DNA of 64,000 nucleotides, from positions 62,001 to 126,000 of the IMG/VR virus record IMGVR_UViG_3300010403_000705; one strand, given 5' to 3'. Under the pieces are notes generated by a model. The model made no database searches and was not told the origin of the DNA. It was given only the letters and a program-made list of their open reading frames with translations. Position 1 is the stretch's first letter, and each line of letters starts with the position of its first letter. The translations under genes were made by a program, and so were the position numbers. Below, in pieces: positions 2,999-36,176 of this stretch.

Positions 2999-3458
2999 GA
3001 AAATAGATAATGAATTCTTAAGTGAATTCATTTCAAATTGTATTAAAAAGGGTCTTTTTTCTTCAGAGGAAATAGTAGGTTTAGCACAATCAAAAATAAC
3101 TGATATTGATCTTAAGATAAGAGAAGTAGAAAGCTTAAAACTTTTAAGATCTAAATTACTGGATGTAATTACTGCATTTAAAAAAACGAATAAAGATAAA
3201 AAAGATGATAATGAGTTACTCTCTTTTTATAAAATACAAAACGCACAGATATCTAAATTAATTTGTGATAATGTAAAAAATAAATTAAATATCATTAATA
3301 TGATTTATGATACTAAACAGTTTTCTACTACAGATATTATATTTTGTATTAAACAGTTATTAGAAAATAAAATAATTCTAAAAACTGAGGGTAATTATTT
3401 TATAGAAGGTGAAATGTTTGAACAATATTATTCTTTTTTGTTAAAAAGTAACAATTAA
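2973..3458 (+). CDS. hypothetical protein (true start probably ATG 2982 or 2988)
   Basis: 161 aa ORF; C-terminus resembles a winged helix. Confidence 0.6.
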   Translation: MRIMFMKGKKIDNEFLSEFISNCIKKGLFSSEEIVGLAQSKITDIDLKIREVESLKLLRSKLLDVITAFKKTNKDKKDDNELLSFYKIQNAQISKLICDNVKNKLNIINMIYDTKQFSTTDIIFCIKQLLENKIILKTEGNYFIEGEMFEQYYSFLLKSNN

Positions 3459-3461
3459 TGT

Positions 3462-3794
3462 ATGAAAAGTTTACCAAATAGTATTACTAAAAGAATTTTA
3501 TGGAGATATGTAAATAAGAAAATAAACAGAACTATACATCATTATCATGTGTTCAGTGTTATAACTATTCTATTTGATGAAATATTAAATGATTTAAAAC
3601 TTGGTAAGGAACTGAAGATTTTTAATTTTGGAAGATTAGTTATAAAAGAGTTACCGTCACGTAAATATTATAACATTCATGATAAAACTATAAGAATATC
3701 CAATTCTCATAAGATTTTAAGATTTATATTATCTTCAAAATTAAGAAAAGAATTAAAGAAACAATTAGATGTGGATCTTTTTTTTGAAAGATGA
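3462..3794 (+). CDS. HU/IHF family DNA-binding protein
   Basis: LFDEILNDLKLGKELKIFNFGRLVIKELPSRKYYN...ILRFILSSKLRK matches the HU/IHF signature (I-x-x-FG-x-F, arm, F-x-x-S-x-x-L). Confidence 0.8.
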   Translation: MKSLPNSITKRILWRYVNKKINRTIHHYHVFSVITILFDEILNDLKLGKELKIFNFGRLVIKELPSRKYYNIHDKTIRISNSHKILRFILSSKLRKELKKQLDVDLFFER

Positions 3795-3800
3795 ATTTGA

Positions 3801-4184
3801 GTGAAAAAAAATCAAGAGTTATATGTGTGTAGTAGTATTTATAATAACGAAATATTATCAAAGATTATTCCCGCTTCTTCCAAAAAAGAAGCGGGAATAA
3901 TCTTTGATAATAAATTTAAAATACAAGCCCAAGAAATTCTAGGACCCTTCCTTGATGTTAAAAAGAAAGTGTTAGAAACCACAAAAATTTTGAAGTTTTC
4001 TGACAATAAAATTCATAAAGCATTTTATAATGATTGGTTAGTTAATGCTTTTTATCTATTGGAGCCTGCTGACCATGCATATCTAGTTTTTATAAAAAGA
4101 ATAGATGGTATCAAAAATAATCAACCGCCTAAAGGGACAATTATAGTACCAATACACAATTTGAGGTTTATACAAGATGAATAA
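3801..4184 (+). CDS. hypothetical protein
   Basis: 127 aa ORF, GTG start; contains a long internal inverted repeat. Confidence 0.6.
   Translation: MKKNQELYVCSSIYNNEILSKIIPASSKKEAGIIFDNKFKIQAQEILGPFLDVKKKVLETTKILKFSDNKIHKAFYNDWLVNAFYLLEPADHAYLVFIKRIDGIKNNQPPKGTIIVPIHNLRFIQDE
3853..3912. repeat. perfect 27-bp inverted repeat with 6-nt loop
   Basis: TATTATCAAAGATTATTCCCGCTTCTT (3853-3879) / CCAAAA / AAGAAGCGGGAATAATCTTTGATAATA (3886-3912). Confidence 0.95.
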
Positions 4185-4527
4185 AAAATTTTTACAACAA
4201 ATGAAAGATAACCTAGTAAAACAAAAGCAAGAGTTATTAATCAGATCGAAAAACTTACCAGATATAGATATTGAAGGTGATGAAACAGACGAGGTACAAG
4301 CGAATTTATTGATTGAAGTGGCAAATCAATTATCTGCTCGTGACATTAGTAAGATATATTTAATCGACGGTGCTTTAAAAAGAATAGAAAATAATACCTA
4401 TGGATTATGTGAGGAATGTGATGATCATATTCCAGAAAAAAGATTATTAGCTAATCCATATTTTTTAACTTGTGTGATATGCGCTGAACAGAGAGAGGCT
4501 GAAGAAAAACAAAGGAAGAGGTATTGA
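4177..4527 (+). CDS. dksA: DksA/TraR C4 zinc-finger protein
   Basis: Coiled coil with DETDEV tip; ALKRIENNTYGLCEEC...IPEKRLLANP...CVIC. Confidence 0.9.
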   Translation: MNKKFLQQMKDNLVKQKQELLIRSKNLPDIDIEGDETDEVQANLLIEVANQLSARDISKIYLIDGALKRIENNTYGLCEECDDHIPEKRLLANPYFLTCVICAEQREAEEKQRKRY

Positions 4528-4528
4528 T

Positions 4529-5113
4529 TTGAATACTATTGTTACGGAAGCTACTGAACATGGCGAAATGCCTATCGATATTTATCAAAAATTGTCTAAT
4601 GATAGAATATTATTTATATGTGATGTAATAGATGATAAATTAGCTACTGATATAGTTGCTACCCTCTTATTAAAAGATCTAGAAGATTCTGAGAAAAAAA
4701 TAACCCTTTTTATAAATTCTGAGGGAGGTGATATAAGGAATGTTCTTATGATTTATGATATGATGTGCTTAATACAAGCCCCCATAGAAACGGTATGTAT
4801 TGGTGCAGCTATGGATGAAGCTGCAATAATATTACTTGCTGGTACACAGGGTATGAGATTAGCTACTCCCAATTCGATAATATCTATAAGTCAATTAGTT
4901 CATGATTGGACAAGTTATTCTGATCTAACAGATGCAAAGAAAATTCTTGATCGATCTATGCAAGATAACAAAAAAATGATGGATATAATTGCTAAAAGTG
5001 TTGGTAAAACATTAAAACAGGTCATTGAGGATTTTAATAGGCGAGTTTTTATGAATTGTAACCAAGCAGTTAAATATGGCTTAATTGATAAGGTGGTTGT
5101 TTTTAACAAATGA
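4529..5113 (+). CDS. ClpP-like subunit lacking catalytic Ser/His (ClpR-like)
   Basis: ClpP fold motifs DIYQKLSNDRILF, LFINSEGG, A..YGLIDKV; nucleophile position reads GAAMDEAA and His position reads ISISQL. Confidence 0.85.
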   Translation: MNTIVTEATEHGEMPIDIYQKLSNDRILFICDVIDDKLATDIVATLLLKDLEDSEKKITLFINSEGGDIRNVLMIYDMMCLIQAPIETVCIGAAMDEAAIILLAGTQGMRLATPNSIISISQLVHDWTSYSDLTDAKKILDRSMQDNKKMMDIIAKSVGKTLKQVIEDFNRRVFMNCNQAVKYGLIDKVVVFNK

Positions 5114-5709
5114 AAACAAAAATGAAAGATCACGATGATCAAGATAACTTGGATAATATTCCAATTTTTCCGGGTTATGTAGAGACTTACATTAAACTAG
5201 CAAAAGATAGAATCATTTTCTTAAACGAAGATGTGACAAAGCAAGCTGCTGCTAATTTATCAGCTCTTTTGTTATATTATGATAATGAAAATTCTGATGA
5301 AAGTATTAGTATTTACATTCATTGTAGTGGGGGAGATGCTGCGGGATTAGTAAATATTTATGATGTTATGCAAATGATAAAATCACCTATCAAAACTATA
5401 TGTATTGGCAAGTGTTATTCTGCGGGTGCTATAATTTTGGCTGCTGGAAACGTTGGTGAAAGGTATGCATTTAAACATTCTAAGATTATGATACATGGCG
5501 TTCAGGCAGGTTTTCCAATTTTAGGTCATGATATAACGAACTCAAAAAGCTATTATGATTTTCTAAAGGATAGTAATGATAAGATAATGAAGATATTAAG
5601 TGATCATACTGGACATTCCTTAGAAAAAATTAAGCAAGATTGTTTAAGAGATGTTTGGTTAGACGCTAAACAGGCATTAGATTATGGTTTAATTGACGAA
5701 ATATTATGA
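5110..5709 (+). CDS. clpP: ATP-dependent Clp protease proteolytic subunit
   Basis: Intact triad: GKCYSAGA (Ser), IMIHG (His), RDVWL (Asp); ALDYGLIDEI. Confidence 0.92.
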   Translation: MKTKMKDHDDQDNLDNIPIFPGYVETYIKLAKDRIIFLNEDVTKQAAANLSALLLYYDNENSDESISIYIHCSGGDAAGLVNIYDVMQMIKSPIKTICIGKCYSAGAIILAAGNVGERYAFKHSKIMIHGVQAGFPILGHDITNSKSYYDFLKDSNDKIMKILSDHTGHSLEKIKQDCLRDVWLDAKQALDYGLIDEIL

Positions 5710-6417
5710 ATAATTTATCTTTAGTATCTTTCGTTGGAGTAGATCTTCGAACAAATTTTGAAGATCTATTATCTTTTCATAACAAAAATATAAAATATGA
5801 ATTTGGTGTTTTATATTCCGACTCTAAAAATGGATTATATCAAAGATACCCTGACTATAAGTTTTCAGAGAGATTCTTAAGGTGGTGTCAAAATAATAAA
5901 GTTAATTCTTCTTTGCATCTATGCGGGACATCTATAGATAAATTCTTAAATGAAGAAGATATTATTATGAATTTATGTTTAATTGCTGATCGCATACAAT
6001 TAAACATAAATATAAAAAAATATGATAATTTTGATATATTAAGCGATAATATACTAAAGATTAGTAAAAAGAATAATTATAGTATTATTTTACAAGATAA
6101 TCAAACAAAAAAAAGAGTTTAATAAGCTTTTTTTGTCAAAGATAGATCAGGATTTTCCTTTATCATTATTATACGATTCTTCTGGTGGTTTTGGCAGGCA
6201 GATTAGTAAAGTATCTGCACCAGATAATAAGTTTTTCACTGGTTATGCTGGCGGAATTAACCCATCCAATGTGCAGAAGATAATTTCATTAATAGATATG
6301 AGTAATATTAATAATAAACCATATTATATTGATATGGAATCTGGAATAAGAATTGATAATATATTTTCTATTTCAGAATGTAATAAGATAAAAGCTTTAA
6401 TTGAGGCTCGAATCTAA
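5706..6417 (+). pseudogene. TrpF (PRA isomerase)-like TIM-barrel protein split by a +1 frameshift in an A8 run
   Basis: ORFs 5706-6122 and 6133-6417 join into 236 aa if one A is removed from 6107-6114; LLYDSSGGFG, GYAGGINPSNV, IDMESGIR motifs. Confidence 0.7.
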
Positions 6418-6449
6418 AACTAACAATAGCAATAATCACCTATTATTGT

Positions 6450-7907
6450 ATGATTAAAGTTGCCGGCAAACCGTCTTCAGATCCTATTCAAGAAAAACTG
6501 AGACAAAGCAAAAAAATTTGGAATAAGCAAGTCTCAGAATTTGCTGATGATCTTTTTCGTATCAAAGATACTATGAATGGTAAGCCTTCTAAATTTCATC
6601 CGGAAAAATCTTCAATTAAAGATCCTATTCCTGGAGATCCTGTAACTATTATTGGAGTTTTGGTAAGTGATTTTCAAGATATAGCTCAAAAAGGAAATGA
6701 TATTATAAGACAACAACTTGAATATTCTAAGACAAGAAAAAGGAAACAACCTAAACAGTCTTTAGCGCCAATGCCAACATCACCTAATAATAGTCCCTCT
6801 ACAATAGATCTGAGTAAGCAATTAACAGCAACAGCAGATATGTATCAGTTGATCGCTCTAGGATCAAATCCATTAACTAGATTTTTTGCTCGTTTACTTA
6901 ATCCATCTTTTGGAACCAGCCATAAAGCAAGGACTAGAAAATACAGAATGTCTTTGTTAAAATCTGCTGTAGAGATATTTAAAGATTTAGTCGATTTGGA
7001 AGCATTTATAGTAAAATCCTCTCCAGAAAGCATTTTTAATGCCAGCAAACTTCTTTCGAAAATAGAAGGTAACTGGAATTTTTTTAAGACTGGATTAAAT
7101 ACTTATAAAGAGACAATGACACAAGATATAGTTAATACAACTCCTATTGAAGATAAACTTAATGTGCGGACTGTTCCAAATGATAATATTACAATTACAG
7201 AGCCATCTAATAGTTACTCTTCATCACAGATAAATTCTATAATAGAAGATTATAAAAAATACAGTAACAATTTTACAGATATTAATTTAAAAAATCTTTT
7301 TTCTTTAATAGGAAAATTCTTAAGTGTTCCTATCGAGAATAAAAATAAAAAATCTTTGATAAGTTCCGAATTACAAAGTGAATATAATAAAGTATTAAGT
7401 ATTCTGAATATTAAATATAATACTAATGGTTCATCATTTAAAGAAGTTTGGGAAACTAAACAAGCGAAGGCGCAATTTCATACTGATCAATTAGAAGCGG
7501 TAGCAGATCGTTCAATCGAAAGATGGTTAGGTAAAATTAAACATCAGTTAGGTCCATCGAATAAAACATCTGCTTATAGGCTAGATATTTATAAGGCTGC
7601 TAATAAAGCTAGAGACTTAATAGATAAGATTATGGATTCTTTAGAAAAGGAAATGAATACTTCCCAGTTAGAAGGACTTGCTAATCAAATAACTGCTGAG
7701 TTTAAAATTATGGAAAGATTGATAAGGGAATTAGAATCCACTTTACGTGGTAAGAATTTTGATAAGTCTTTCATGGACCTCTTAGAAAGTGGTAAAATAA
7801 CTAATTTTGACCCTGAGTTAACTTCTGAGCAGCGGGGCAACCTTCAAAAAATGATTGAAAGAAGAAGGGTAAGAGAACTAACGGATTTTTACCAAAATAG
7901 GAAATAA
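6450..7907 (+). CDS. hypothetical helical protein, possible virion/internal head protein
   Basis: 485 aa; starts MIKVAG (K-x-A); internally repeated helical modules. Confidence 0.6.
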   Translation: MIKVAGKPSSDPIQEKLRQSKKIWNKQVSEFADDLFRIKDTMNGKPSKFHPEKSSIKDPIPGDPVTIIGVLVSDFQDIAQKGNDIIRQQLEYSKTRKRKQPKQSLAPMPTSPNNSPSTIDLSKQLTATADMYQLIALGSNPLTRFFARLLNPSFGTSHKARTRKYRMSLLKSAVEIFKDLVDLEAFIVKSSPESIFNASKLLSKIEGNWNFFKTGLNTYKETMTQDIVNTTPIEDKLNVRTVPNDNITITEPSNSYSSSQINSIIEDYKKYSNNFTDINLKNLFSLIGKFLSVPIENKNKKSLISSELQSEYNKVLSILNIKYNTNGSSFKEVWETKQAKAQFHTDQLEAVADRSIERWLGKIKHQLGPSNKTSAYRLDIYKAANKARDLIDKIMDSLEKEMNTSQLEGLANQITAEFKIMERLIRELESTLRGKNFDKSFMDLLESGKITNFDPELTSEQRGNLQKMIERRRVRELTDFYQNRK

Positions 7908-7909
7908 GT

Positions 7910-8299
7910 ATGAGAGAAGGCTATTTATATATAGATAGTAATATTTTTCCAACTTATTTGGCAATATCAAGTCAAGAACAACAACAAGGGTTAATGCATG
8001 TCGATTGGCCACCGCCGGTAATGGCATTTGTATATGCTGCTCCACAAGTTAATAAATTTTGGATGAAAAACACTCCAAGTCCTTTGGATATTGTATTTTG
8101 TTGTAGTGGAGAAATAGTAGATATTTGTAAAGGGGAGCCATATTGTACTTCAACAATTGGAAATAAATATAGTGATTTAGTTATTGAGTTACCATACGGT
8201 ACGATTTCTAAATTAGGAATTGTAGAAAAACATAAGGCAGGTATTATAACACCTAAAGCTAATGAATTGCGACAGATATTTGGACAGTTAAAATTATAA
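7910..8299 (+). CDS. DUF192 family protein
   Basis: QQGLM...MAFVY...FWMKNTPSPLDIVF...VIELPYG. Confidence 0.85.
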   Translation: MREGYLYIDSNIFPTYLAISSQEQQQGLMHVDWPPPVMAFVYAAPQVNKFWMKNTPSPLDIVFCCSGEIVDICKGEPYCTSTIGNKYSDLVIELPYGTISKLGIVEKHKAGIITPKANELRQIFGQLKL

Positions 8300-8339
8300 C
8301 ATAACCTCTCCCATCGAAGAAAGTGGTTGGGGAAAGTGT

Positions 8340-9335
8340 ATGAACAATCAACATATTCATGATTTTAATAAGATCCTTCGTAACTTTAATATTAAAGCTA
8401 CTTGTGTAAACTATAAAGCTATAGATAATTACTTTTTCTATGATTTAAAATTATCTCCTCAAACTAAAGTTCGAGATATCCAAAGATATAATGATGAAAT
8501 TTCTTTATCATTAAAGTCACCTAATAAATCAAATATTAAAATTCTTCATCAAGAAGGTATTGTGAGGTTAGAGTTTGCCGCACCTCGCACACACGTATTA
8601 AAATTATTTGATTATTTTACAAATAATAATGTGCCTAAGGGAGAACTAATGTGTCTTCTTGGTCAATCACTTGATGGTAACAAAATGTGGATGGATTTAG
8701 CACAAAATCCACACATGATCATTTCTGGGACTACCGGATCTGGTAAAAGCACCTTGTTACATAATATCATTGCAAATTTATTCAACTACAGTAAAGTTAA
8801 ACTTTATTTAGTTGATCCAAAAAATGTAGAATTTATCGAATATGATAAAAAAATTAAAAATGATGTGAATGTTTCATATACTTACCATGATGCTTTGCTT
8901 GTTTTAGACTCATTACTAGAAACGATGGAGTATCGATATTCATTGTTACATAGTAATCGAAAGGAAGAATTCCCTCCTATCGTTTTAATTATTGATGAAT
9001 TTTCAGATTTAATTATGCAGGATGTGAATAATGAATTTTATGAAAAACTTTGTCGACTCGCTCAGAAATGTAGAGCTGCAAAAATTCATATTATTCTTTC
9101 AACACAAAGACCTTCTGTAAATATTATTAATGGAACAATTAAAGCTAATTTTCCTGCTCGTATTGCGTGTAGAGTTGCAAGTCATGTAGATTCAAAAGTA
9201 GTATTGGATGCTACAGGTGCTGAAAATCTAATGGGCAAAGGCGATGCTTTGGTTAAGGATAATTATAGATCTATGGAAAGATTTCAAATAGCATATACTG
9301 ACTCTTCAGAAGTGTGTACATATTTTGGTGAATAA
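8340..9335 (+). CDS. FtsK/SpoIIIE-family DNA translocase (motor domain only)
   Basis: PHMIISGTTGSGKS, LVDPK, IIDEFSDL, STQRPS, IKANFPARI, GAENLMGKGD. Confidence 0.9.
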   Translation: MNNQHIHDFNKILRNFNIKATCVNYKAIDNYFFYDLKLSPQTKVRDIQRYNDEISLSLKSPNKSNIKILHQEGIVRLEFAAPRTHVLKLFDYFTNNNVPKGELMCLLGQSLDGNKMWMDLAQNPHMIISGTTGSGKSTLLHNIIANLFNYSKVKLYLVDPKNVEFIEYDKKIKNDVNVSYTYHDALLVLDSLLETMEYRYSLLHSNRKEEFPPIVLIIDEFSDLIMQDVNNEFYEKLCRLAQKCRAAKIHIILSTQRPSVNIINGTIKANFPARIACRVASHVDSKVVLDATGAENLMGKGDALVKDNYRSMERFQIAYTDSSEVCTYFGE

Positions 9336-11104: not shown

Positions 11105-11160
11105 AGAATAGATAGAATAAAATAATTTATATTTTTGCTTGATAAATTTTGGGAATAACC

Positions 11161-12951
11161 ATGAAAACATTAATAATAGTCGAATCTCCTTCCAAAGGAG
11201 AAAGTATACAAAATTATCTTGGTAAAGATTTTATTGTAATGGCAAGTAAAGGTCACATTACTGATCTTGCAAAAGGTGGAAGGCATAATTTAGGAGTGGA
11301 TATTGAGGATAATTTTAAACCACGATATGTATTAATGGAAGACAAAGTTCAAACATTGAATCAACTGATTAATGCGGCAAAAAAAGTTGATCAAATTTTT
11401 GTAGCTTCTGATCCTGATAGAGAGGGAGAAGCTATTGCATGGCATCTTGCGCAAAGATTAGAAGGGGTAGGTAAACCGATTAAGAGAATGGTTTTTAATG
11501 AAATAAAAAAAGATAAACTACTAAAGGCAGTTAAAGATGTGCGTGATATTAATATGGACCTTTTTCATGCGCAAGAAGCTCGCCGAATATTAGATAGAAT
11601 TGTTGGTTTCATGGCTTCGCCGTTTCTAATGAATTTTTTTGGTCCAAAGCTTTCAGCAGGACGCGTACAATCTGTTGTAACAAAAATGGTTATTGATCGT
11701 GAAAGAGAAATAGAAGCTTTTGTACCAGAAGATTTTTGGACGATACAAGTAATATTATCTAAAGATAACAAAAATGGTTTTAGTACTAAATATTCTGGAA
11801 AATTACTAGATGCTAAAAATGCTGAATTGATGCGAGATAAATTAGCATCCGCTAGTGATTATGTGGTATCTGATGTTATTGCGGAAGAAGAGAAAAAAGG
11901 ACCTGTTGCACCATTGGTAACCTCTAGTTTACAGCGCTTAATGTCTAGACAATATGGGTTTTCGGCTGATAGAACTATGAAAGCTGCTCAATCGCTATAC
12001 GAATCTGGCTACTGCACTTATATTAGAACTGATTCTGTAAGAATAGGTGATGAGGCTTTAGCAGAAGTCCGACAATGGTTAACAGATAATAAATATGTAA
12101 TTCCTAAAAAACCAAATTCTTATAAGAATAAGGATGCGGCACAAGATGCCCATGAATGCATTAGACCATCTAATCTAACATTAATTCCAAATAATAATAT
12201 GTCAATAATTGATCCTGACGAAAAATTAGTTTATGAGTCTATCTGGAAATATTTTATTGCTAGTCAAATGATGCCAGCAGTATATAATACTTTAAAAATT
12301 ACTGCTCATGTAAAAGACGATAAAAAAGCAGAAGTTAAAGCATCTGGTAAAGCATTAAAAATAAGTGGATATTTAGATATTTTGGGAGTTGTAGATGATA
12401 GTAAAATCGATATTCCTAACCTAGACAAAGGTGATCCACTTAAACTTTTTGGTAAAATTCCAGTTAGGATGGAGAAAAAACAGACACAACCACCTCCAAG
12501 GTTTTCAGAGGATAAATTAATTAAAGAATTAGATATTAGAAATATTGGTAGACCAGCTACTTACGCAGATTTATTGAGCAAAATTTGTAATAGGAATTAC
12601 GTCGAAAAGAAAGGCAGCGTTTTCCATGCTACAGATCTAGGCAAACAAATTACTGATGTGCTGTCTGGTTATTTTGCATTTATGAATTATGATTATACTG
12701 CTAAAATGGAAAAATTGTTAGACGAAATTGAATGCGGTAAAATTAATCATACCGATATGTTAAAAAACTTTTATCCAGAATTTAAATCAGAATTAGATAA
12801 AGCATACCTTGGATATGGTGGCACATTGTGTGATAAATGTGGCAGTGCAATGGTAACAAGAACCGTTAAAATTTCTGGTAATAAATTTCTTGCCTGCTCT
12901 GCTTATCCAAGATGCAATAATACTAAGAATATGGAGAAAAATGAAAAGTAA
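11161..12951 (+). CDS. topA: DNA topoisomerase I (type IA)
   Basis: LIIVESPSK, ASDPDREGEAIAWH, SAGRVQS, catalytic YIRTDS, QDAHECIRP, GRPATY, C-terminal Zn ribbon. Confidence 0.97.
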   Translation: MKTLIIVESPSKGESIQNYLGKDFIVMASKGHITDLAKGGRHNLGVDIEDNFKPRYVLMEDKVQTLNQLINAAKKVDQIFVASDPDREGEAIAWHLAQRLEGVGKPIKRMVFNEIKKDKLLKAVKDVRDINMDLFHAQEARRILDRIVGFMASPFLMNFFGPKLSAGRVQSVVTKMVIDREREIEAFVPEDFWTIQVILSKDNKNGFSTKYSGKLLDAKNAELMRDKLASASDYVVSDVIAEEEKKGPVAPLVTSSLQRLMSRQYGFSADRTMKAAQSLYESGYCTYIRTDSVRIGDEALAEVRQWLTDNKYVIPKKPNSYKNKDAAQDAHECIRPSNLTLIPNNNMSIIDPDEKLVYESIWKYFIASQMMPAVYNTLKITAHVKDDKKAEVKASGKALKISGYLDILGVVDDSKIDIPNLDKGDPLKLFGKIPVRMEKKQTQPPPRFSEDKLIKELDIRNIGRPATYADLLSKICNRNYVEKKGSVFHATDLGKQITDVLSGYFAFMNYDYTAKMEKLLDEIECGKINHTDMLKNFYPEFKSELDKAYLGYGGTLCDKCGSAMVTRTVKISGNKFLACSAYPRCNNTKNMEKNEK

Positions 12952-13228
12952 AAGATTATCACATTTTGACCTGGAAGTTAGAAATGGTCTTTGTAATATA
13001 GATATAATTCAACACTCTGATACTAAAGAGATGGTCTCTGAAGATATTGTAGATGATACAGATGCAAATTCTTTGCAAGTATGGTGGGAAATAGTATTCG
13101 AAACTTGTCAGTATGAAACTGGTGCTGATTTTTCCAATAAAAGTTCATTTGTAATCTATAAATTAGATGATCTTAATAGATTATCAGAAGCTTTCCAGAA
13201 AGCTATTAAGGAAACTCGTAACAGATGA
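12941..13228 (+). CDS. hypothetical protein
   Basis: ATG 12941 has a GGAG RBS; preferred over the upstream TTG. Confidence 0.55.
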   Translation: MKSKRLSHFDLEVRNGLCNIDIIQHSDTKEMVSEDIVDDTDANSLQVWWEIVFETCQYETGADFSNKSSFVIYKLDDLNRLSEAFQKAIKETRNR

Positions 13229-14544
13229 GAAATAACAAAAAAAGTACAAAAACAGAGTGTATTGATTCAAAATTTTTTGAATCTCAAGAACATCTTTCTA
13301 GAGAAATATTAGATAAGATGAAGCCTCGGATTGAATCTGTGGGAGCTGACAGACCCACTGCTAATTTCATTGACTTAATGAATTGGGTAATGCATTCTTT
13401 TTCTTCCTATATGAAAGATCAAGAAAATTTAAATAAATATGTTAATAACAGAATTATCATTGATGGTCAGTTTTTAACTTTTTGTAAAGAAACTGGAGTA
13501 GATGTTAGTTGCTTATACAAAGATTCTATCATTTCTTGGAAGACTGATCACGACTTTGAAAAATTTTTTATGCAAGGCATTTTTTTAATTAAATCAAAAA
13601 ATGTGGAATTTTTACATGCCGCCTTGTTTCATAAAGGCAATCAGCATGAAGATGAAGTGAGTTTTTTTGTTGTTGTTTCAAATAATAATTATAATGAATA
13701 TGTAAAACTAAGAAATTCTTTTGATAATTGGGTTTTAAAAAGAGACAGAAGTAATCTTAATATACGAGTAATAGATGGAGAAGATATACCATATACTAAA
13801 GATTACAACTGGGATAGTTTATTTTTGCCCAGTGATATTAAAAAAGAGTTACAAAGTTTGGTTGAAAATTTTTTATCCTCTAAAGAATTTTATGAAAGTA
13901 ATAAGATTCCATGGAAAAGAGGAGTATTGTTATACGGTAAACCTGGTAATGGAAAAACTTCTATTATTAGAACTATAATATCTATGTATAATTTTAAACC
14001 TGTTACTATTGTGCCAGGAGGCAACGATGAGGCAGTTAGAGAAGCTTTTTCATATGCTGAAGAACAAAGTCCATCATTATTGTATTTTGAAGATTCAGAT
14101 TCTATGTTAGATAAAAATGTCGATACTTCTTCTTTTTTAAATTTAATGGATGGTATTTCAGCTAAAAACGGTTTATTAGTTATTGCTACTGCTAATGATG
14201 TGAAGAAACTAAAACCCAGTATTACAGATCGTCCTTCTAGATTCGATAGAAAATTTGAAATTCCTCTTCCAAATCAAGAAATGGCGTATATATATCTTAA
14301 GAGATGGTTTGGTTCTCTATTGACTAACAGTAAATGTAAAGAACTGTCTAAGTATGCAGAAAAATCAGAATTTTCTTACGCATACTTAAAAGAGCTTTAT
14401 ATTTCTGCTATGTTTGAAGCTTTAGCTCATAATCGTAAATCTCCAACAGAAAAAGATATAGAAAACTCTTTAAATCGTCTCATCAAAGATAAAAATATTA
14501 TTAACGGTAATAAAATAATAAGTACTGATAAGTATTTTAAATGA
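13225..14544 (+). CDS. AAA+ ATPase (BCS1/classic-clade-like)
   Basis: PWKRGVLLYGKPGNGKTS, LLYFEDSD, FLNLMDG, IATAN, DRPSRFDR. Confidence 0.9.
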   Translation: MRNNKKSTKTECIDSKFFESQEHLSREILDKMKPRIESVGADRPTANFIDLMNWVMHSFSSYMKDQENLNKYVNNRIIIDGQFLTFCKETGVDVSCLYKDSIISWKTDHDFEKFFMQGIFLIKSKNVEFLHAALFHKGNQHEDEVSFFVVVSNNNYNEYVKLRNSFDNWVLKRDRSNLNIRVIDGEDIPYTKDYNWDSLFLPSDIKKELQSLVENFLSSKEFYESNKIPWKRGVLLYGKPGNGKTSIIRTIISMYNFKPVTIVPGGNDEAVREAFSYAEEQSPSLLYFEDSDSMLDKNVDTSSFLNLMDGISAKNGLLVIATANDVKKLKPSITDRPSRFDRKFEIPLPNQEMAYIYLKRWFGSLLTNSKCKELSKYAEKSEFSYAYLKELYISAMFEALAHNRKSPTEKDIENSLNRLIKDKNIINGNKIISTDKYFK

Positions 14545-16417: not shown

Positions 16418-17119
16418 ATGTCATCACAATTTCAAATTATAGTTGCCGATCCGCCTTGGGATTTTAATGATCTTTTAAAAATGTCAGATGTTGCACGAGG
16501 ATCTAAATCTAATTATCTCACCATGTCAATGTCAGACATTCAACATTTACCTATAAATAAATATGCAGATCCAAACGGTGCTATTCTAGCATTATGGGTT
16601 CCGTCTTCTTTATTACAAGAAGGTTTGAATGTTCTATCAGCATGGGGATTTACACATAAACAAACTTATGTATGGGTAAAAACAAAAATAAATCCATTTG
16701 TACACATTACTAAAGAATTTTTTAATAACATAAAAAAAATTTTAGATAAGAATAGTGCGTTGAGCCCTCGTGCTATAATTTGTATAAAAAATGCATTGTG
16801 TAAAACATACTCACTGGATAATATTTTATCTTTTGGCATGGGTCGTTTATTTAGGCAAACTCATGAAATTTGTTTAATCGGAGTGAACAACAATAAAATA
16901 TATAAAAAATTAAATAATAGATCACAAAGATCTGTATCATTTGCAGAAAATTTAAAACATTCTGCAAAGCCAGAATGTTTACAAAACTCTTTGGAATTAA
17001 TGTTTCCAGATTCAAATAAATTAGAATTATTTGCCAGAAGAATCAAACCTAATTGGGTTTGTTTAGGTAATGAAGTATGTAATGGAGAAGATATTACAGT
17101 CTCTCTCGCTAAATTATAA
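16418..17119 (+). CDS. MT-A70 family N6-adenine methyltransferase
   Basis: IIVADPPW, LWV, WGF, VWVK, GMG..FRQTHEICLIG, HSAKP, KLELFAR, GNE. Confidence 0.9.
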   Translation: MSSQFQIIVADPPWDFNDLLKMSDVARGSKSNYLTMSMSDIQHLPINKYADPNGAILALWVPSSLLQEGLNVLSAWGFTHKQTYVWVKTKINPFVHITKEFFNNIKKILDKNSALSPRAIICIKNALCKTYSLDNILSFGMGRLFRQTHEICLIGVNNNKIYKKLNNRSQRSVSFAENLKHSAKPECLQNSLELMFPDSNKLELFARRIKPNWVCLGNEVCNGEDITVSLAKL

Positions 17120-19388: not shown

Positions 19389-19697
19389 ATGTACTATTTA
19401 ACTCAAGAATGTGATTTAATTATAAGTGATAAAGTGCAAGTTTTGTATTTTTATGCAACATGGATGCCACATCATAACAAGATGTTATCAATGATAGATA
19501 AAATGGAGCAAAAATATAAAAATGTAGAATTTATTGCAATTGATGTCGATTTTTTCAAAAATTTATGCAAACGTTTTGAAGTAGAATCTATTCCAATAGT
19601 TATTATATTAAACAACGGAAAAGCCATTAAAAGGATTGAAGGGTTAGTATTAACGAGTGCATTTAAAAATGCATTTGCTGATATATTTAAATTATAG
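19389..19697 (+). CDS. thioredoxin-fold protein lacking CxxC
   Basis: FYATWMPHH in place of FxAxWCxxC; IDVD, FEVESIP (cis-Pro), NGK...IEG retained. Confidence 0.8.
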   Translation: MYYLTQECDLIISDKVQVLYFYATWMPHHNKMLSMIDKMEQKYKNVEFIAIDVDFFKNLCKRFEVESIPIVIILNNGKAIKRIEGLVLTSAFKNAFADIFKL

Positions 19698-20687: not shown

Positions 20688-21205
20688 TAAGAAAAGCAGA
20701 TTCAGTACCAATAACTAGATTATTTAAACATTATAATTTACGAATTAATGATCAAAATAGAAAAATAATATGTCCTTTTCCTACTCATAAAAGTGGAAGA
20801 GAAAGTTCGCCTTCTTTTTATTTTTATCCACAAACTAATAGTTTTTGGTGTTTTGGATGTAAAATAGGAACAAGATGCTGCGATTTAATTGCTAATATGG
20901 AGAATATTTCCAGAACTAAAGCAGCATTTAAAATATTAGAGTTGTTTAAATCTGATGTAGATGATGATGCTGTTTTGATTGATAGAGATAACTTTTCTGA
21001 AAAGTTATCTCTAATGTTGAGTTTTTCTGAGCATGTTAGAAACTTTATACATTATAATAATGATGAAAAATCTTTATTATTCATCGACCATGTGTGTGAG
21101 GTTTATGATACGGTAAATGCAAAGCATCATTTGAGTAATGATGCTTTGCAATCTGTAATAAGTCAATTAAAAGAAAAGATAGATTCTTATACATTATATG
21201 TCTAA
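20684..21205 (+). CDS. stand-alone CHC2 zinc-finger (primase zinc-binding domain) protein
   Basis: CPFPTH...ESSPSF...NSFWCFGC; TTG 20684 start preferred over ATG 20579. Confidence 0.85.
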   Translation: MIRKADSVPITRLFKHYNLRINDQNRKIICPFPTHKSGRESSPSFYFYPQTNSFWCFGCKIGTRCCDLIANMENISRTKAAFKILELFKSDVDDDAVLIDRDNFSEKLSLMLSFSEHVRNFIHYNNDEKSLLFIDHVCEVYDTVNAKHHLSNDALQSVISQLKEKIDSYTLYV

Positions 21206-22397
21206 TATCATTATACTTGGAGATCCACATTTAGGAAAAAGCTTATCTCAGGGCAGAGTTGGCATTGGGTCTAACTTAAATAGTCGTATTGTAGATCAGC
21301 TTAATCTTCTTGATTGGACCTTGGATCAAGCAATAGATTTATCTATAGATCATATAGTAATAACAGGAGATATTTTCGAAGATCCTAGACCACCTCCTTC
21401 ATTAATTACTTTATTCATTTCTTGGTTAAAAAAATGCCAAGCTAATTCTGTGCATGTTCATTTAATTTTGGGCAACCATGATATACTGCGCAGTGGTTTT
21501 ATTTACTCCTCTCCATTAGATATTATTAGTGAGGTAGAATTAGAAAATGTTGATGTGTATAAAAATATTAATACAATCACTATTGATACAACTGCTATAA
21601 CTTTAATGCCGTTTCGAGATCGAAAAGCCCTAGGAGCATCAACAAATAGTAATGCTCTTTCTTTACTAAAAGAATATTTAGTATATGAATTAGCTAGTAT
21701 GCCTATTACTTATAAAAAAGTTTTAATAGGACATTTAGCTATCGAAGGCTCTATTCCTATTGGTGATGAAATTGATGATATAAGTAATGAATTATTTTGC
21801 CCATTAGATATGTTTAATGGTTATGATTACGTTTGGATGGGGCATGTGCATAAGCCCCAAATTATGAAAAAACAGAAACCATATATTGCACATATTGGTA
21901 GTATGGATATTTCTAATTTTGCCGAAATCGATCACAGTAAACATATAATTATACTTAATTGTTCTTCAAATCAAGAATTTATAACAAAAAAGTTACCGAC
22001 TAGACCATTAAAAAAAATATCTATTGTAATTCCCAAATTTGTTGAAGATACTACTAAGTACGCTATTCAATGTATTAAAGATATGAATAAAGATTTGAAC
22101 AAATCTACAATAAGAGTGGAAATTGCACTAGAAAGCCCTGAACTACAATCAATTGACAAATCTGCAATAGAAAAATACTTAATTAATCAAGGCGTTTTTA
22201 ATATTACTGGTATCTCGGAATCTAAAAAAGCTATTTTGATAAAAAAAGATAATTATAATACTCTGGATACCAAAATAGATGTACCATCCGCCATTAAAAA
22301 ATATAGTTCCATTTATGTAGAAGAAAATCAAAGGTCTGATTTTATCAACTTAGCTATGGAAATTTATAATTCTTATAAGGTTGAATTAAAAGAATGA
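21198..22397 (+). CDS. sbcD: SbcD/Mre11-like metallophosphoesterase nuclease
   Basis: GDPHLG, TGDIFE, GNHD, GHL, MGHVH. Confidence 0.9.
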   Translation: MSNIIILGDPHLGKSLSQGRVGIGSNLNSRIVDQLNLLDWTLDQAIDLSIDHIVITGDIFEDPRPPPSLITLFISWLKKCQANSVHVHLILGNHDILRSGFIYSSPLDIISEVELENVDVYKNINTITIDTTAITLMPFRDRKALGASTNSNALSLLKEYLVYELASMPITYKKVLIGHLAIEGSIPIGDEIDDISNELFCPLDMFNGYDYVWMGHVHKPQIMKKQKPYIAHIGSMDISNFAEIDHSKHIIILNCSSNQEFITKKLPTRPLKKISIVIPKFVEDTTKYAIQCIKDMNKDLNKSTIRVEIALESPELQSIDKSAIEKYLINQGVFNITGISESKKAILIKKDNYNTLDTKIDVPSAIKKYSSIYVEENQRSDFINLAMEIYNSYKVELKE

Positions 22398-34500: not shown

Positions 34501-35074
34501 AGAATCATTTGTTTGTAAACCAGCAGATGCATATGGTAAATTTTTTAAAGAAGACCATAAAACTATTAATGATATTAAACGATCTAAAGATAGGACTAAA
34601 ATATTTCCTATTAAAGCTATAGTAAGGAGCTTTTTTGAATTTAAAGTTAAAAAAGAAACTAGTAAATATTATGGCCAATCCATGATAAAAGCCATAATTG
34701 AGGATATGAATGGAGAACAGTGTTCTTGTACTATTTTTCCAGATAGATGGAAGACGATACAAAACCGATTAAAAGAAGTACATAGTAAAGCGGTATTTGA
34801 CACTGGTTTAGCTCTTAGTTTTGCTGGAAATACAAATAACTATGAAGATGACATTGGTATAATCTTAGAAGACTTATTCAATGTGGCTCTCATTCCATCA
34901 TTGCCAAATGATCTAAAAGCTAAAAAAATTAATTTAAAAGAATTAAAGGCAAAAATTGTAAAAGAAGAAAATAGTATATCTTCCAATAAAGATTCTCTAT
35001 TAGAAGAAATTGAGGACTCCCTTATAAATGATGGCTTGTTAGATTTGGATGTGGAATTTGAAAATGATGATTAA
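31547..35074 (+). CDS. dnaE: DNA polymerase III alpha subunit (family C)
   Basis: PHP domain (AITDHG), GRGSVGGSL, FPDIDTDF, HAGG, KMDTLGL, YGFNMSHS, AYLKAHYP, OB fold. Confidence 0.97.
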   Translation: MFMIEFVSLHNQTYFSILDSLISPKDLFLRAKELGQSAIAITDHGTLASAWDALKASKETGVKLIIGCECYFQNDSQNTEDKFRHIVLIAKNAIGYRNLLTINKKGFDQGVFLGKRVYSVVDWKLLKQYSDGLICLTACGNGIVSQLLTNGKFEEAEETLLKLKDIFGSNLGIEIQPNNMDRGSNFYSDKIDQKFLNRRLIDLGKKYDIKIVAACNAHYLKKEDHAMHDIFLAIGSHQPVYSNFRLKYTVPEFYLKSGEEIKNFFSRNFGEEFAEQICKNSIYFSSLCEYPDWIDPKFSNPSGKELPIFPVKDEKDYLDFCQWVSCQPEEIRKLEEDKLFLRYRCLIKFNSKVKNINNEQRILYDSRIAEELDVLEYHGFSSYMLIVADYIDWARNNNIAVGEGRGSVGGSLIAYLLGIHQADPIKYNLIFARFHNKEKSSFPDIDTDFAPSGRALVQEYLKKKYGEDNVAHVSNVNTITPKVYVRDIARACELGGSREDAIKIGNDVADCIPADIHSIEDALVKVPLFAEYCKKYSEFVKYKDICGKYRAWSTHAGGIIISARPLTGLVPLRKDKDGALAIEYDKDKAEENGLVKMDTLGLSTLDIIGQTIKLIKESGKPLPPEPLNYEEYDKSTYDLVSEGDTFCVFQLGTSGGTIDLCRRIKPKSVNDISYVNSLARPSARDMRTDFIATKDGKKPFSLLHPNLGRAFNNTYGFGLYEESLMYLAQDVAGWSLHSADRLRKLTKEKGKNPKKAQQWRNEFINDATKNSIDEEIAKKIWDEVVDKFQGYGFNMSHSILYSMTSYKTAYLKAHYPVEFLMANLMAEVKSNTPDAKANIEKIKKELREHKVKLMPPDINNSQLSYTISKDNKLLTGLDALKFVGEDAIKDIIEKRPFKSFFDFMVRVDSRKVRANAIQALAAAGSMDIFGIPRKLVYLYCSDYRKKLQVWLKKHDVSKEEFIYPWPQELEWKIHELYALEQYYLGESFVCKPADAYGKFFKEDHKTINDIKRSKDRTKIFPIKAIVRSFFEFKVKKETSKYYGQSMIKAIIEDMNGEQCSCTIFPDRWKTIQNRLKEVHSKAVFDTGLALSFAGNTNNYEDDIGIILEDLFNVALIPSLPNDLKAKKINLKELKAKIVKEENSISSNKDSLLEEIEDSLINDGLLDLDVEFENDD

Positions 35075-35104
35075 AAATTCTATTTAATAGAGAATTCCTT
35101 AAAC

Positions 35105-35138
35105 AAGAGCGCTCGGTTCACCAGAACCGAGCGCTCTT
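35105..35138 (+). terminator. intrinsic terminator after dnaE
   Basis: AAGAGCGCTCGGTTC / ACCA / GAACCGAGCGCTCTT followed by TCTTT. Confidence 0.85.
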
Positions 35139-35151
35139 TCTTTATGAGACA

Positions 35152-35185
35152 ATTGAGAGGTTTTATTTAAATAAAACCTCTCAAT
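35152..35185. repeat. perfect 34-bp palindrome without spacer
   Basis: ATTGAGAGGTTTTATTT|AAATAAAACCTCTCAAT. Confidence 0.95.
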
Positions 35186-35290
35186 GATATATAAGATATT
35201 AATCAATAATAAAAAACAATATAAAAAGTAGTAAATAAGAAAAATGATATAAATGATATTATATGTATATGCATAACAAGGAATAAGATT

Positions 35291-36163: not shown

Positions 36164-36176
36164 ACTTGGAGATTTT

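What the first reader, a model, noticed from the sequence alone, without database searches (positions are those of the whole stretch)
4529..5709. Tandem catalytically dead ClpP (ClpR-like) and active ClpP in a phage
Seen: the first copy has Asp at the nucleophile Ser position (CIGAAMDEAA versus CIGKCYSAGA in the second) and Ser at the catalytic His position (ISISQL versus IMIHG). The second copy has the full Ser-His-Asp triad. The genes overlap by ATGA, suggesting translational coupling. Established: inactive ClpR subunits form hetero-oligomers with ClpP in cyanobacteria, plastids and apicoplasts. Inference: a phage ClpP/ClpR hetero-complex, or an inactive subunit that poisons or redirects host ClpP.
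Basis: partly seen in the sequence, partly recalled or inferred. Interest (0 to 1): 0.7.

Follow-up and report, generated by a model that had tools for sequence, protein, structure and literature searches.

The report
Dead-plus-live ClpP pair in huge phage
A 433-kb soil phage and its many relatives carry, in one tightly packed operon, a working ClpP protease gene preceded by an old, well-conserved copy that has lost all three catalytic residues. The dead copy is most likely a non-catalytic partner subunit of a virus-encoded protein-degrading chamber, something so far described only for cyanobacteria, plastids and apicoplasts.

Summary
ORF 4529-5113 (194 aa, TTG start) and ORF 5110-5709 (199 aa) are both full-length ClpP homologues that overlap by ATGA. 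The first has Asp/Ser/Arg at the Ser/His/Asp triad positions, so all three residues are lost. The second keeps the triad.

The window lies in a 432,844-bp IMG/VR virus record from soil that encodes TerL, a portal protein, 40 tRNAs and a tmRNA.

The lesion is old. All 120 nearest homologues, 25 of 25 related huge-phage genomes and about 35 clusters at 50% identity (down to 32% identity) lack the triad. They form one clade (support 100/99). The dead copy evolves under purifying selection and slightly more slowly than its active partner.

The operon DksA-like zinc finger, then dead ClpP, then active ClpP is conserved throughout. Sister phage lineages have a single intact ClpP at the same syntenic position, so the pair arose by tandem duplication inside phages. 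It is an analogue of ClpR, not a member of that family.

Features were partitioned after duplication. The dead copy keeps the canonical N-terminal beta-hairpin and part of the C-terminal tail. The active copy keeps the triad, but its N-terminus is divergent and modelled as disordered.

A 2+2 complex model supports binding (0.80 against a best control of 0.31). The phage encodes no ClpX/A/C-type unfoldase.

Best reading: an obligate heteromeric phage Clp core that uses host unfoldases. Assembly and activity are untested.

The parts
4177..4527 (+). DksA/TraR-type C4 zinc-finger protein (116 aa), first gene of the conserved three-gene operon. Its stop codon TGA (4525-4527) lies 1 nt before the TTG start of the dead ClpP.
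   Evidence: Pfam zf-dskA_traR, 4.7e-09. NCBIfam DksA_like, 2.4e-15, below the cut-off. It sits directly upstream of the dead ClpP in 25 of 25 genomes and in distant contigs L035, L036, L048 and L085. It also sits upstream of the single intact ClpP in sister lineages.
4514..4521 (+). Shine-Dalgarno-like GGAAGAGG inside the 3' end of the DksA-like gene, 7 nt before the TTG start of the dead ClpP.
   Evidence: Read from the sequence. An AAGAGG-like motif and the TTG AAT AC start are conserved across the related loci.
4529..5113 (+). Catalytically dead ClpP paralogue (194 aa, TTG start). It has no propeptide, a canonical N-terminal beta-hairpin, and a short C-terminal tail ending in FNK.
4814..4816 (+). 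Codon GAT, Asp96, at the position of the nucleophile Ser97 of E. coli ClpP. It is followed by Glu97, which is Glu in 78% of the dead clade, at the oxyanion Met98 position.
4889..4891 (+). Codon AGT, Ser121, at the position of the catalytic His122.
5042..5044 (+). Codon CGA, Arg172, at the position of the catalytic Asp171.
5110..5113 (+). ATGA overlap: the stop of the dead ClpP and the start of the active ClpP.
   Evidence: In relatives the junction is either an overlap or a 6-12 nt gap with a TAAGG/TGAGG motif.
5110..5709 (+). Catalytically intact ClpP paralogue (199 aa). Triad: Ser104 (5419-5421), His129 (5494-5496), Asp181 (5650-5652). Its N-terminal 20-24 residues are divergent, poorly conserved and modelled as disordered. 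It has no C-terminal tail.
3462..3794 (+). Context only: an HU/IHF-like DNA-binding protein, part of the conserved synteny block around the operon.
   Evidence: Pfam Bac_DNA_binding. The same position is occupied in L085, L087 and L090.
6450..9335 (+). Context only: a conserved downstream block of a 485-aa protein of unknown function (6450-7907), DUF192 (7910-8299) and an FtsK/SpoIIIE-like ATPase (8340-9335).
   Evidence: The same order is seen next to the ClpP pair or the single ClpP.

Best explanation
The two genes encode the two subunits of a phage-made Clp peptidase core. An ancestral huge phage already carried one intact ClpP gene directly after a DksA-like gene. That gene was duplicated in tandem. 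The upstream copy lost the Ser-His-Asp triad but stayed under purifying selection as a structural or regulatory subunit. It kept the axial N-terminal beta-hairpin and part of the C-terminal tail. The downstream copy kept the active site but let its N-terminal gating region degenerate, possibly into a propeptide. The two are translated from one coupled message and assemble into a mixed tetradecamer; whether rings are mixed or stacked as 7+7 is unresolved. The phage has no ClpX/ClpA/ClpC-type unfoldase, so the core most likely docks to host Clp ATPases and redirects host ATP-dependent proteolysis during infection. SHOWN: loss of the triad, its age and universality, purifying selection, the conserved operon, the single-copy sister state, and the absence of a phage Clp unfoldase. 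INFERRED: hetero-assembly, the division of labour, and the use of host unfoldases.
For: Triad lost in the first copy and kept in the second. The dead state holds in 120/120 close homologues, in 25/25 related genomes, and in about 35 clusters at 50% identity down to 32% identity. The dead proteins form one clade with support 100/99, and the active partners form one clade with support 99/97. The topologies of the two subtrees are congruent. Selection: mean pairwise identity is 0.65 (dead) against 0.61 (active), and the dead copy is the more conserved in 82% of pairs. dN is 0.28 against 0.32, and dN/dS is 0.11-0.36 wherever dS is unsaturated. The DksA-like, dead, active operon is conserved, with TTG and ATGA-type junctions. 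Single intact ClpPs occupy the same DksA...DUF192-FtsK synteny. Together with both paralogue clades, they are separated from 26 canonical ClpPs by a 96/96 branch. A sister relationship of the dead and active clades is not rejected (AU p = 0.446). Features are retained in a complementary way. The AF2 model of the dead copy has pLDDT 92 with an N-terminal hairpin (strands at 4-9 and 12-17) and TM 0.93 to M. tuberculosis ClpP1P2 chains. Residues 1-20 of the active copy have pLDDT below 50. Complex model (2+2 chains): ipSAE 0.80 against a best-of-3-controls value of 0.31. That mark was reached by 58 of 80 solved complexes and by 2 of 110 mismatched pairs. The runs agree in at least 57% of contacts and the partner pLDDT is at least 82. 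Both the lateral and the handle contacts are heterotypic. The genome has no ClpX, no AAA_2-type ATPase over the cut-off, and no ClpS. The one weak AAA_2 hit is an intein-bearing MoxR/AAA_5-like ATPase.
Against: No experiment or transcript data exist; no RNA run was listed. The complex score may reflect memory of solved ClpP assemblies, and any two ClpP homologues might pass; homo-oligomers were not scored. The 4-chain model cannot distinguish mixed rings from stacked homo-heptamers. The docking pocket of the dead copy carries Thr in place of Leu114 in 82% of the clade, whereas the pockets of the active copy look more canonical. It is therefore unclear which face binds an unfoldase. A classic-clade AAA ATPase similar to YjoB/VAT lies 8 kb downstream (13225-14544) and could be an unrecognised partner. 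No dedicated prohead protease was identified, so a role in virion maturation is not excluded.
Confidence: 0.6

Rival explanations
1. Decoy or poison. The dead subunit acts on the host rather than with its neighbour. It either co-assembles with host ClpP and lowers its activity, or forms inert rings that soak up host ClpX/ClpA/ClpC. This would protect phage proteins or block host responses that depend on proteolysis. The active copy would then have a separate job.
For: The dead copy keeps a canonical N-terminal hairpin and largely hydrophobic docking pockets. Its fold is almost superimposable on cellular ClpP (TM 0.93). The phage encodes no Clp unfoldase of its own.
Against: In every genome and contig examined (25 related genomes plus contigs L035, L036, L048 and L085) the dead copy is followed by, and usually translationally coupled to, the active copy. 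The two subtrees are congruent. Features are split between the two copies in a complementary way. The hosts of these diverse phages must differ, yet the dead copy is highly conserved. That pattern fits a constant viral partner better than variable host ClpPs.
Confidence: 0.15
2. Virion maturation. The pair is the phage's prohead (head-maturation) protease, or a packaged virion protease, of the ClpP-related S14 type. The dead copy would serve as a scaffold-like or regulatory partner.
For: PHROG head-maturation-protease families are hit weakly (phrog_94: 6e-13 and 4e-28). No S77 (T4 gp21-like) or S78 (HK97-like) prohead protease was found. The ORF after the portal gene could not be assigned. [quoted passage not shown]
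Against: Both proteins are full-length cellular-type ClpPs. They score 166-167 bits on the NCBIfam ClpP subfamily, against 48-58 bits on the ClpP-related head-maturation model, whose cut-off is 120. They lie 51 kb from TerL and the portal gene, in a block of DNA-binding, DksA, FtsK, topoisomerase and replication genes. This synteny is conserved. They are not fused to, or adjacent to, scaffold or capsid genes.
Confidence: 0.12
3. Unfoldase-independent open-gate peptidase. Because the N-terminal gate of the active subunit has degenerated, the mixed core would have a permanently open pore. It would degrade unfolded, nascent or tmRNA-tagged polypeptides without any AAA+ partner, like ADEP-activated ClpP. 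This would feed amino-acid recycling or host shut-off.
For: Residues 1-20 of the active copy are poorly conserved and modelled as disordered. There is no phage Clp unfoldase. A phage tmRNA with an ...AQAA/...ALAA tag lies 7-12 kb upstream in 6 of 6 genomes.
Against: The variable N-terminus may simply be a cleaved propeptide, as in many ClpPs. The docking pockets are conserved in both subunits, which argues for a partner ATPase. Linkage to the tmRNA may only reflect shared ancestry.
Confidence: 0.1

Closest known systems
ClpP3/ClpR cores of cyanobacteria, ClpP/ClpR cores of plastids, and ClpP/ClpR of apicoplasts (review PMC7966870)
   Same: Both have a ClpP homologue that lacks the catalytic triad, is maintained by selection, and works (here: is predicted to work) with a catalytic ClpP paralogue in one tetradecamer. 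As in Plasmodium, the inactive subunit has no prodomain, while the active one carries an N-terminal extension.
   Different: The origin is independent: a tandem duplication of a phage ClpP inside a DksA-linked operon. The pair is encoded by a virus, and no cognate ClpC, ClpS or ClpT is encoded. Triad replacement residues vary widely within the clade. Neither protein reaches the cut-off of any NCBIfam ClpP equivalog.
Bacterial ClpP1/ClpP2 hetero-tetradecamers (M. tuberculosis, Listeria, P. aeruginosa, Chlamydia; for example PMC9067928, PMC12451819, PMC9257651, PMC9823225)
   Same: Two co-encoded paralogues are specialised, and the cores are functionally asymmetric, with unfoldases docking on one subunit type only. 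The best structural matches of the dead-copy model are M. tuberculosis ClpP1P2 chains.
   Different: In those systems both paralogues keep the catalytic triad, apart from Asn in place of Asp in Listeria ClpP1 (recalled from my own knowledge, not checked in the cited papers). Here one paralogue has lost all three residues in every member.
Stand-alone ClpP (sometimes with ClpX/ClpA/ClpS) of jumbo phages (Iyer et al. 2021, PMC7824862; phage G, PMC12484599)
   Same: In both cases a cellular-type ClpP is encoded by a very large phage, outside the head module, and is thought to act on host or phage proteins.
   Different: Those are single, catalytically intact genes; the lone ClpP of LR756504 is an example and groups with canonical ClpPs. 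No dead paralogue is described in the papers found. No GenBank phage holds a relative of the dead copy above 40% identity.
ClpP-related prohead proteases of tailed phages (NCBIfam NF045542, PHROG 94/1684/2976/133)
   Same: Both are phage-encoded members of the S14 superfamily.
   Different: The scores fall far below the family cut-off, the genes lie outside the head module, and they are full-length ClpPs with a handle and an N-terminal region.

Membership tests
ClpP / peptidase family S14 (Pfam PF00574) | Sequence and fold of the ClpP subunit over its full length | tested here: met
   Both ORFs score above the Pfam cut-off of 20.2 bits (156.9 and 167.4 bits), covering model positions 3-179 and 8-179 of 182. 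PDB phmmer E-values are 6.5e-34 and 5e-37. The AF2 model of the dead copy has TM 0.93 to solved ClpPs.
ClpP / peptidase family S14 (Pfam PF00574) | Ser-His-Asp catalytic triad (E. coli S97, H122, D171) | tested here: not met
   The dead copy (4529-5113) has Asp96, Ser121 and Arg172 at these positions, so it is a non-peptidase homologue. The active copy (5110-5709) has Ser104, His129 and Asp181 and meets the criterion.
ClpR (non-catalytic Clp core subunit of cyanobacteria, plastids and apicoplasts) | A ClpP homologue lacking the catalytic triad and conserved as such | tested here: met
   The triad is absent in 120/120 close homologues, 25/25 genomes and about 35 clusters at 50% identity. dN/dS is 0.11-0.36.
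ClpR (non-catalytic Clp core subunit of cyanobacteria, plastids and apicoplasts) | Assembles with a catalytic ClpP paralogue into one tetradecameric core | tested here: inconclusive
   The pair is always co-encoded and translationally coupled. The 2+2 complex model scores 0.80 against a best control of 0.31; 58 of 80 solved complexes and 2 of 110 mismatched pairs reach that mark; the runs agree in at least 57% of contacts; the partner pLDDT is at least 82. There is no biochemical evidence, and the pass may come from the model's memory of ClpP structures.
ClpR (non-catalytic Clp core subunit of cyanobacteria, plastids and apicoplasts) | Common descent with the cyanobacterial/plastid ClpR lineage | tested here: not met
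   The dead clade groups with its active partner clade and with single intact phage ClpPs from the same synteny block. A 96/96 branch separates them from 26 canonical ClpPs. A sister relationship of the dead and active clades is not rejected (p = 0.446). All NCBIfam ClpP equivalogs score below their cut-offs. Caveat: no named ClpR reference sequence could be put into the tree.
ClpR (non-catalytic Clp core subunit of cyanobacteria, plastids and apicoplasts) | Works with a ClpC-type chaperone and ClpS/ClpT accessories | not testable with these tools
   The phage encodes no ClpX, no AAA_2-type ATPase and no ClpS. The host is unknown.
ClpP-related phage head-maturation protease (NCBIfam NF045542 / NF045540) | Score above the family cut-off | tested here: not met
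   The two proteins score 48.3 and 57.6 bits against a cut-off of 120, and 43 and 55 bits against a cut-off of 475.
ClpP-related phage head-maturation protease (NCBIfam NF045542 / NF045540) | Encoded in the head module, next to portal, scaffold or capsid genes, or fused to them | tested here: not met
   TerL lies at 55877-57745 and the portal gene at 57803-59626, about 51 kb downstream. The neighbours are HU, DksA-like, DUF192, FtsK-like and topoisomerase genes.
ClpP1/ClpP2-type bacterial heteromeric cores | Two co-encoded ClpP paralogues, both with catalytic residues, forming stacked homo-heptameric rings | tested here: not met
   The paralogues are co-encoded (met), but one of them is fully non-catalytic. 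Ring arrangement cannot be decided. The 4-chain model places unlike subunits side by side and also across the handle.

The most novel reading that the evidence does not exclude
After duplication, the phage split one ClpP into two obligatory halves. One is a gate-and-dock subunit with no active site. The other is a cutting subunit with no gate. This builds an asymmetric, virus-controlled degradation chamber that captures host unfoldases. The chamber would form a functional unit with the co-translated DksA-like RNA-polymerase factor, either as its timer substrate or as an adaptor. It would also work with the phage's own tmRNA a few kb upstream. Together these would make a viral pathway for tagging and destroying proteins during takeover. 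A variant of this reading is that the degenerate gate makes the core unfoldase-independent, a natural counterpart of ADEP-deregulated ClpP.
Probability: 0.2. Interest if true: 0.8.

Novelty: new variant of a known kind. Interest (0 to 1): 0.62.

Why it matters
Non-catalytic ClpP-like subunits were known from cyanobacteria and the organelles derived from them. Here the same solution has evolved independently in a virus. The intermediate state, a single intact ClpP in the same operon, is still alive in sister lineages. This makes it a natural case study of how a homo-oligomeric protease becomes an obligate hetero-oligomer. The family is large: more than 700 clusters at 90% identity, on contigs up to 467 kb. 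It belongs to a huge-phage lineage with no close relative among deposited phage genomes. It points to a widespread viral strategy of taking over ATP-dependent proteolysis. If the dead subunit is the docking face for host unfoldases, it is also a ready-made tool for probing or redirecting ClpX/ClpA/ClpC.

Tried and rejected
- **DNA search of GenBank phages (3000-9000):** no match.
- **Protein searches of GenBank phages:** the dead copy reaches at most 40% identity and TerL at most 26%. The lineage is therefore not among deposited phages.
- **Phage-encoded Clp unfoldase or adaptor:** ClpX (TIGR00382), AAA_2 and ClpS gave nothing over the cut-offs.
- **The weak AAA_2 hit:** it lies in a 718-aa ORF that I suspected of being an intein-split ClpX. 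It proved to be an intein plus a MoxR/AAA_5-like ATPase. I rejected it as a partner.
- **SmpB:** absent.
- **Dedicated prohead protease:** Pfam S77 and S78 gave nothing. The ORF after the portal gene was uninformative in PHROGs, Pfam and the Atlas. The prohead-protease rival is therefore weakened by location and scores, not excluded.
- **Bacterial genomes, dead-copy alignment:** pattern scan A1 found no relative. Alignment A2 was too diverse to search with.
- **Bacterial genomes, active-copy alignment:** it found mostly ordinary Bacteroidota ClpPs at 31-38% identity. It also found one 383-kb contig, binned in a Chitinophagales MAG, that carries the full module.
- **Expression:** one soil DNA run holds the locus, and no RNA run was listed.
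- **Rooted placement against ClpR:** I could not include a named cyanobacterial ClpR sequence, because no tool gave one by reference. Independence from ClpR therefore rests on synteny and on the phage-internal clade.
- **Synonymous sites:** they are saturated for most genome pairs, so dN/dS is reported only for pairs with dS below 2.
Full report
**1. What is in the sequence**

Two ORFs lie on the + strand at 4529-5113 (TTG start, 194 aa) and 5110-5709 (ATG, 199 aa). They share the four bases ATGA.

Both match Pfam CLP_protease over almost the whole model (E 6.5e-46 and 3.8e-49). They are 35% identical to each other.

Alignments to solved ClpPs and to E. coli ClpP taken from NC_000913.3 place the residues as follows:
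- First protein: Asp96 at the nucleophile Ser97 position, Ser121 at His122, and Arg172 at Asp171.
- Second protein: Ser104, His129 and Asp181, so the triad is intact.

From here on I call the two proteins D (dead) and A (active).

**2. Where it is**

The window is bases 62001-126000 of a single 432,844-bp IMG/VR virus record. CheckV estimates it at 97% complete, and IMG/VR flags it as 'provirus'. The record has 33% G+C, 40 tRNAs, a tmRNA and a CTA-anticodon suppressor tRNA.

TerL (55877-57745) and the portal gene (57803-59626) lie in the window. Nearly all ORFs are on one strand. One public run, a soil metagenome, holds the locus.

A related record of 451,956 bp has direct terminal repeats, so these are free phage genomes. 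No GenBank phage is close: TerL reaches at most 26% identity and D at most 40%.

D and A are the only ClpP genes in the genome.

**3. The lesion is old and universal**

- Among the 120 nearest homologues of D (70% identity or more, on contigs up to 467 kb), the Ser position holds D/N/G/A, the His position S/N/G, and the Asp position R/K/T/V. None has the triad.
- In 24 IMG/VR loci plus the window, every genome has the tandem arrangement with D first and A second. D is dead in all 25. A has Ser and His in all 25, with Asp in 20 and Glu in 5.
- An exhaustive search of 1.84 billion cluster representatives at 50% identity shows that the roughly 35 best clusters, down to 32-40% identity, are all dead. 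Their replacement residues vary widely. Ordinary Ser-His-Asp ClpPs follow after them.
- In trees, all dead proteins form one clade: SH-aLRT 99 with 51 rows, and 100/99 in the careful tree.

**4. D is under selection**

D is slightly more conserved than A. Mean pairwise identity is 0.65 against 0.61, and D is the more conserved in 82% of 293 genome pairs. Mean dN is 0.28 against 0.32.

Where synonymous sites are not saturated, dN/dS is 0.11-0.36 for D, the same range as for A. D is therefore not a decaying pseudogene.

D-specific residues that became fixed include Glu at the oxyanion Met98 position (78%), Arg at position 71 on the substrate-binding strand (84%), and Thr at pocket position 114 (82%). 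I infer, without a test, that Arg71 and Glu98 fill the former active-site cleft.

**5. A conserved three-gene operon**

In all 25 genomes a DksA/TraR-type zinc-finger gene (window 4177-4527) ends 1-3 nt before the conserved TTG AAT AC start of D. An AAGAGG-like motif lies inside its 3' end.

D and A either overlap (ATGA or TAATG) or are 6-12 nt apart with a TAAGG-like motif.

The same order is seen on contigs carrying very distant D proteins:
- L035, 40% identity
- L036, 32% identity
- the contig of P0131
- L085
- L048, a 383-kb contig binned in a Chitinophagales MAG

The wider block is also conserved: HU-like, one more gene, DksA-like, D, A, a protein of about 500 aa, DUF192, then FtsK-like.

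**6. Origin**

Four Ser-His-Asp ClpPs branch near the pair (P0159, P0218, P0260, P0213). They sit as single genes in this same synteny: DksA-like, then ClpP, then a protein of 500-670 aa, then DUF192, and in one case FtsK.

In the careful tree, 26 canonical ClpPs form one side of a 96/96 branch. These include E. coli ClpP and the lone ClpP of a 636-kb phage. D, A and the syntenic single ClpPs form the other side.

The order among D, A and the singles is unresolved. An AU test does not reject D and A as sisters (p = 0.446).

The simplest history is a tandem duplication of a phage ClpP that was already linked to the DksA-like gene, followed by loss of catalysis in the upstream copy. The stem branch of D (0.67) is about twice that of A (0.32). 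This fits a burst of change followed by constraint.

D is therefore an analogue of cyanobacterial/plastid ClpR, not a member of that lineage. The caveat is that no named ClpR sequence could be added to the tree. All NCBIfam ClpP equivalogs score below their cut-offs.

**7. Features were partitioned after duplication**

The single-copy phage ClpPs have three features together: a more or less canonical N-terminal loop, the triad, and a C-terminal tail of the form ..VPFRKEIPPLIK followed by basic residues.

D keeps the first and part of the third:
- It has a canonical N-terminus with no propeptide. Asn2 is present in 94% of the clade and Glu at the Glu8 position in 84%; Gly13, Glu14, Asp18 and Tyr20 are retained.
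- It keeps the start of the tail (..VVFNK).

A keeps the second and loses the other two:
- It keeps the triad.
- It ends right after the last helix, with no tail.
- Its N-terminus is longer and poorly conserved, and only a Gly-Tyr..Thr-Tyr motif remains.

AlphaFold2 models agree with this. D has mean pLDDT 92.4 with a beta-hairpin at residues 4-17, and TM 0.93 to M. tuberculosis ClpP1P2 and S. aureus ClpP chains. A has mean pLDDT 86.4, with residues 1-20 below 50 and no hairpin.

The A extension may be a propeptide. This would parallel Plasmodium, where ClpP has a prodomain and ClpR has none (PMC7966870).

The hydrophobic docking pockets are kept in both subunits and look somewhat more canonical in A. 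I therefore cannot say which face binds an unfoldase.

**8. Do D and A bind each other?**

A model of two A and two D chains scored ipSAE 0.80 (median of three runs), against 0.31 for the best of three controls. In the tool's calibration, 58 of 80 solved complexes and 2 of 110 mismatched pairs reached that mark. The runs agree in at least 57% of contacts, and the partner pLDDT is at least 82.

The contacts include the lateral, within-ring interface (A 81-88 with D 91-93 and 113-116). They also include the handle-helix interface across rings (A 142-151 with D 136-147). The model therefore puts unlike subunits next to each other in both directions.

This supports binding but does not show it. 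ClpP assemblies are in the training data, and homo-oligomers were not scored.

**9. Partners**

The genome has no ClpX (TIGR00382), no AAA_2-type ATPase over the cut-off, no ClpS and no SmpB. The one weak AAA_2 hit is an intein-bearing MoxR/AAA_5-like ATPase.

A classic-clade AAA ATPase most like B. subtilis YjoB and archaeal VAT lies at 13225-14544. It shows no IGF/LGF-type loop on reading, and nothing links it to ClpP.

The likely unfoldases are therefore those of the host. This is inference.

**10. Rivals**

- **Poison or decoy acting on the host Clp system.** This is possible, because D retains its docking features. It is disfavoured by the invariable pairing with A.
- **Prohead protease.** No S77 or S78 protease was found, and phage G packages ClpP and ClpX. 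However, the scores for the head-maturation family are far below its cut-off, and the genes lie 51 kb from TerL and the portal gene in a conserved non-structural block.
- **Unfoldase-independent open-gate core.** The disordered N-terminus of A suggests it. The conserved docking pockets weaken it.

**11. Literature**

Full-text searches found:
- ClpP noted in some jumbo phages (PMC7824862)
- ClpP plus ClpX in phage G (PMC12484599)
- CLP_protease among the common domains of Jug phages (PMC12880540)

They found no description of a catalytically dead phage ClpP paralogue or of a DksA-ClpP operon. The search covers open-access texts only.

**12. Verdict**

This is a new, independently evolved viral variant of the ClpP/ClpR principle. 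It is widespread in an undescribed huge-phage lineage, and the evolutionary intermediate still exists in sister lineages. Assembly, activity and the identity of the unfoldase remain to be tested.

Noticed in passing
Outside the window: G000:C1:55645-55997 (about 6 kb before the window start). Related loci L040-L044.: The phage encodes a tmRNA with the tag ANDNAFVPMAQAA. A tmRNA lies 7-12 kb upstream of the DksA-ClpP module in all 5 related genomes searched; ARAGORN called a tag in two of them (one identical, one ANDNAFAPMALAA). No SmpB was found. A link to the ClpP pair through degradation of tagged proteins is possible, but only synteny was shown.
   Followed up: partly
window 5706-6122 and 6133-6417: A PRAI (TrpF)-like gene directly after the active ClpP is split into two frames at a run of eight A's near 6108-6117. 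In relative L005 the two parts are in one frame. The gene is present only in the window, L003, L005 and L022. It could be a homopolymer assembly error, a real frameshift, or a pseudogene.
   Followed up: partly
L048 (JAIXLO010000160.1, 383,427 bp), module at 4059-5531: A 383-kb contig binned in a 'Chitinophagales bacterium' MAG carries the full DksA-like, dead ClpP, active ClpP module and the downstream conserved gene. It is probably a huge-phage genome binned with a bacterial MAG. This is a weak hint that the host is in the Bacteroidota.
   Followed up: partly
Outside the window: G000:C1:58637-58710. TAG-ending ORFs, for example window 19389-19697.: A suppressor-type tRNA with anticodon CTA is present (ARAGORN calls it tRNA-Pyl). 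TAG is the rarest stop codon (42 of 439 + strand ORFs of 100 aa or more). Three TAG-ending ORFs continue in frame for 100 aa or more. Some TAG readthrough or recoding may occur.
   Followed up: no
Outside the window: G000:C1 about 34201-36357 (L027 166-2322): A 718-aa ORF made of a LAGLIDADG-type intein (residues about 25-390) inserted near the N-terminus of a MoxR/AAA_5-like phage ATPase.
   Followed up: partly
window 13225-14544: A 439-aa classic-clade AAA ATPase. Its best solved relatives are B. subtilis YjoB and archaeal VAT/Cdc48, and it has a 200-aa N-terminal domain of unknown kind. No tie to the ClpP pair was shown, and its conservation in relatives was not checked.
   Followed up: partly
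window 8340-39797, 52092-52865 and 63071-63802: The rest of the window is rich in cell-like functions. It holds an FtsK-like ATPase, a topoisomerase IA-type enzyme (11149-12951) and an MT-A70 methyltransferase (16418-17119). It also holds an HNH endonuclease, SbcCD (21198-24610) and a 1175-aa DnaE-type polymerase (31547-35074). Further along are a UvsX-like recombinase (38616-39797), a CCA-adding/poly(A)-polymerase-family enzyme and a tyrosine phosphatase.
   Followed up: no
window 59718-60953: The 411-aa ORF right after the portal gene has no Pfam or PHROG match and a low-confidence Atlas model. It may be a scaffold or prohead protease of an unrecognised kind. This matters for the prohead-protease rival.
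   Followed up: partly
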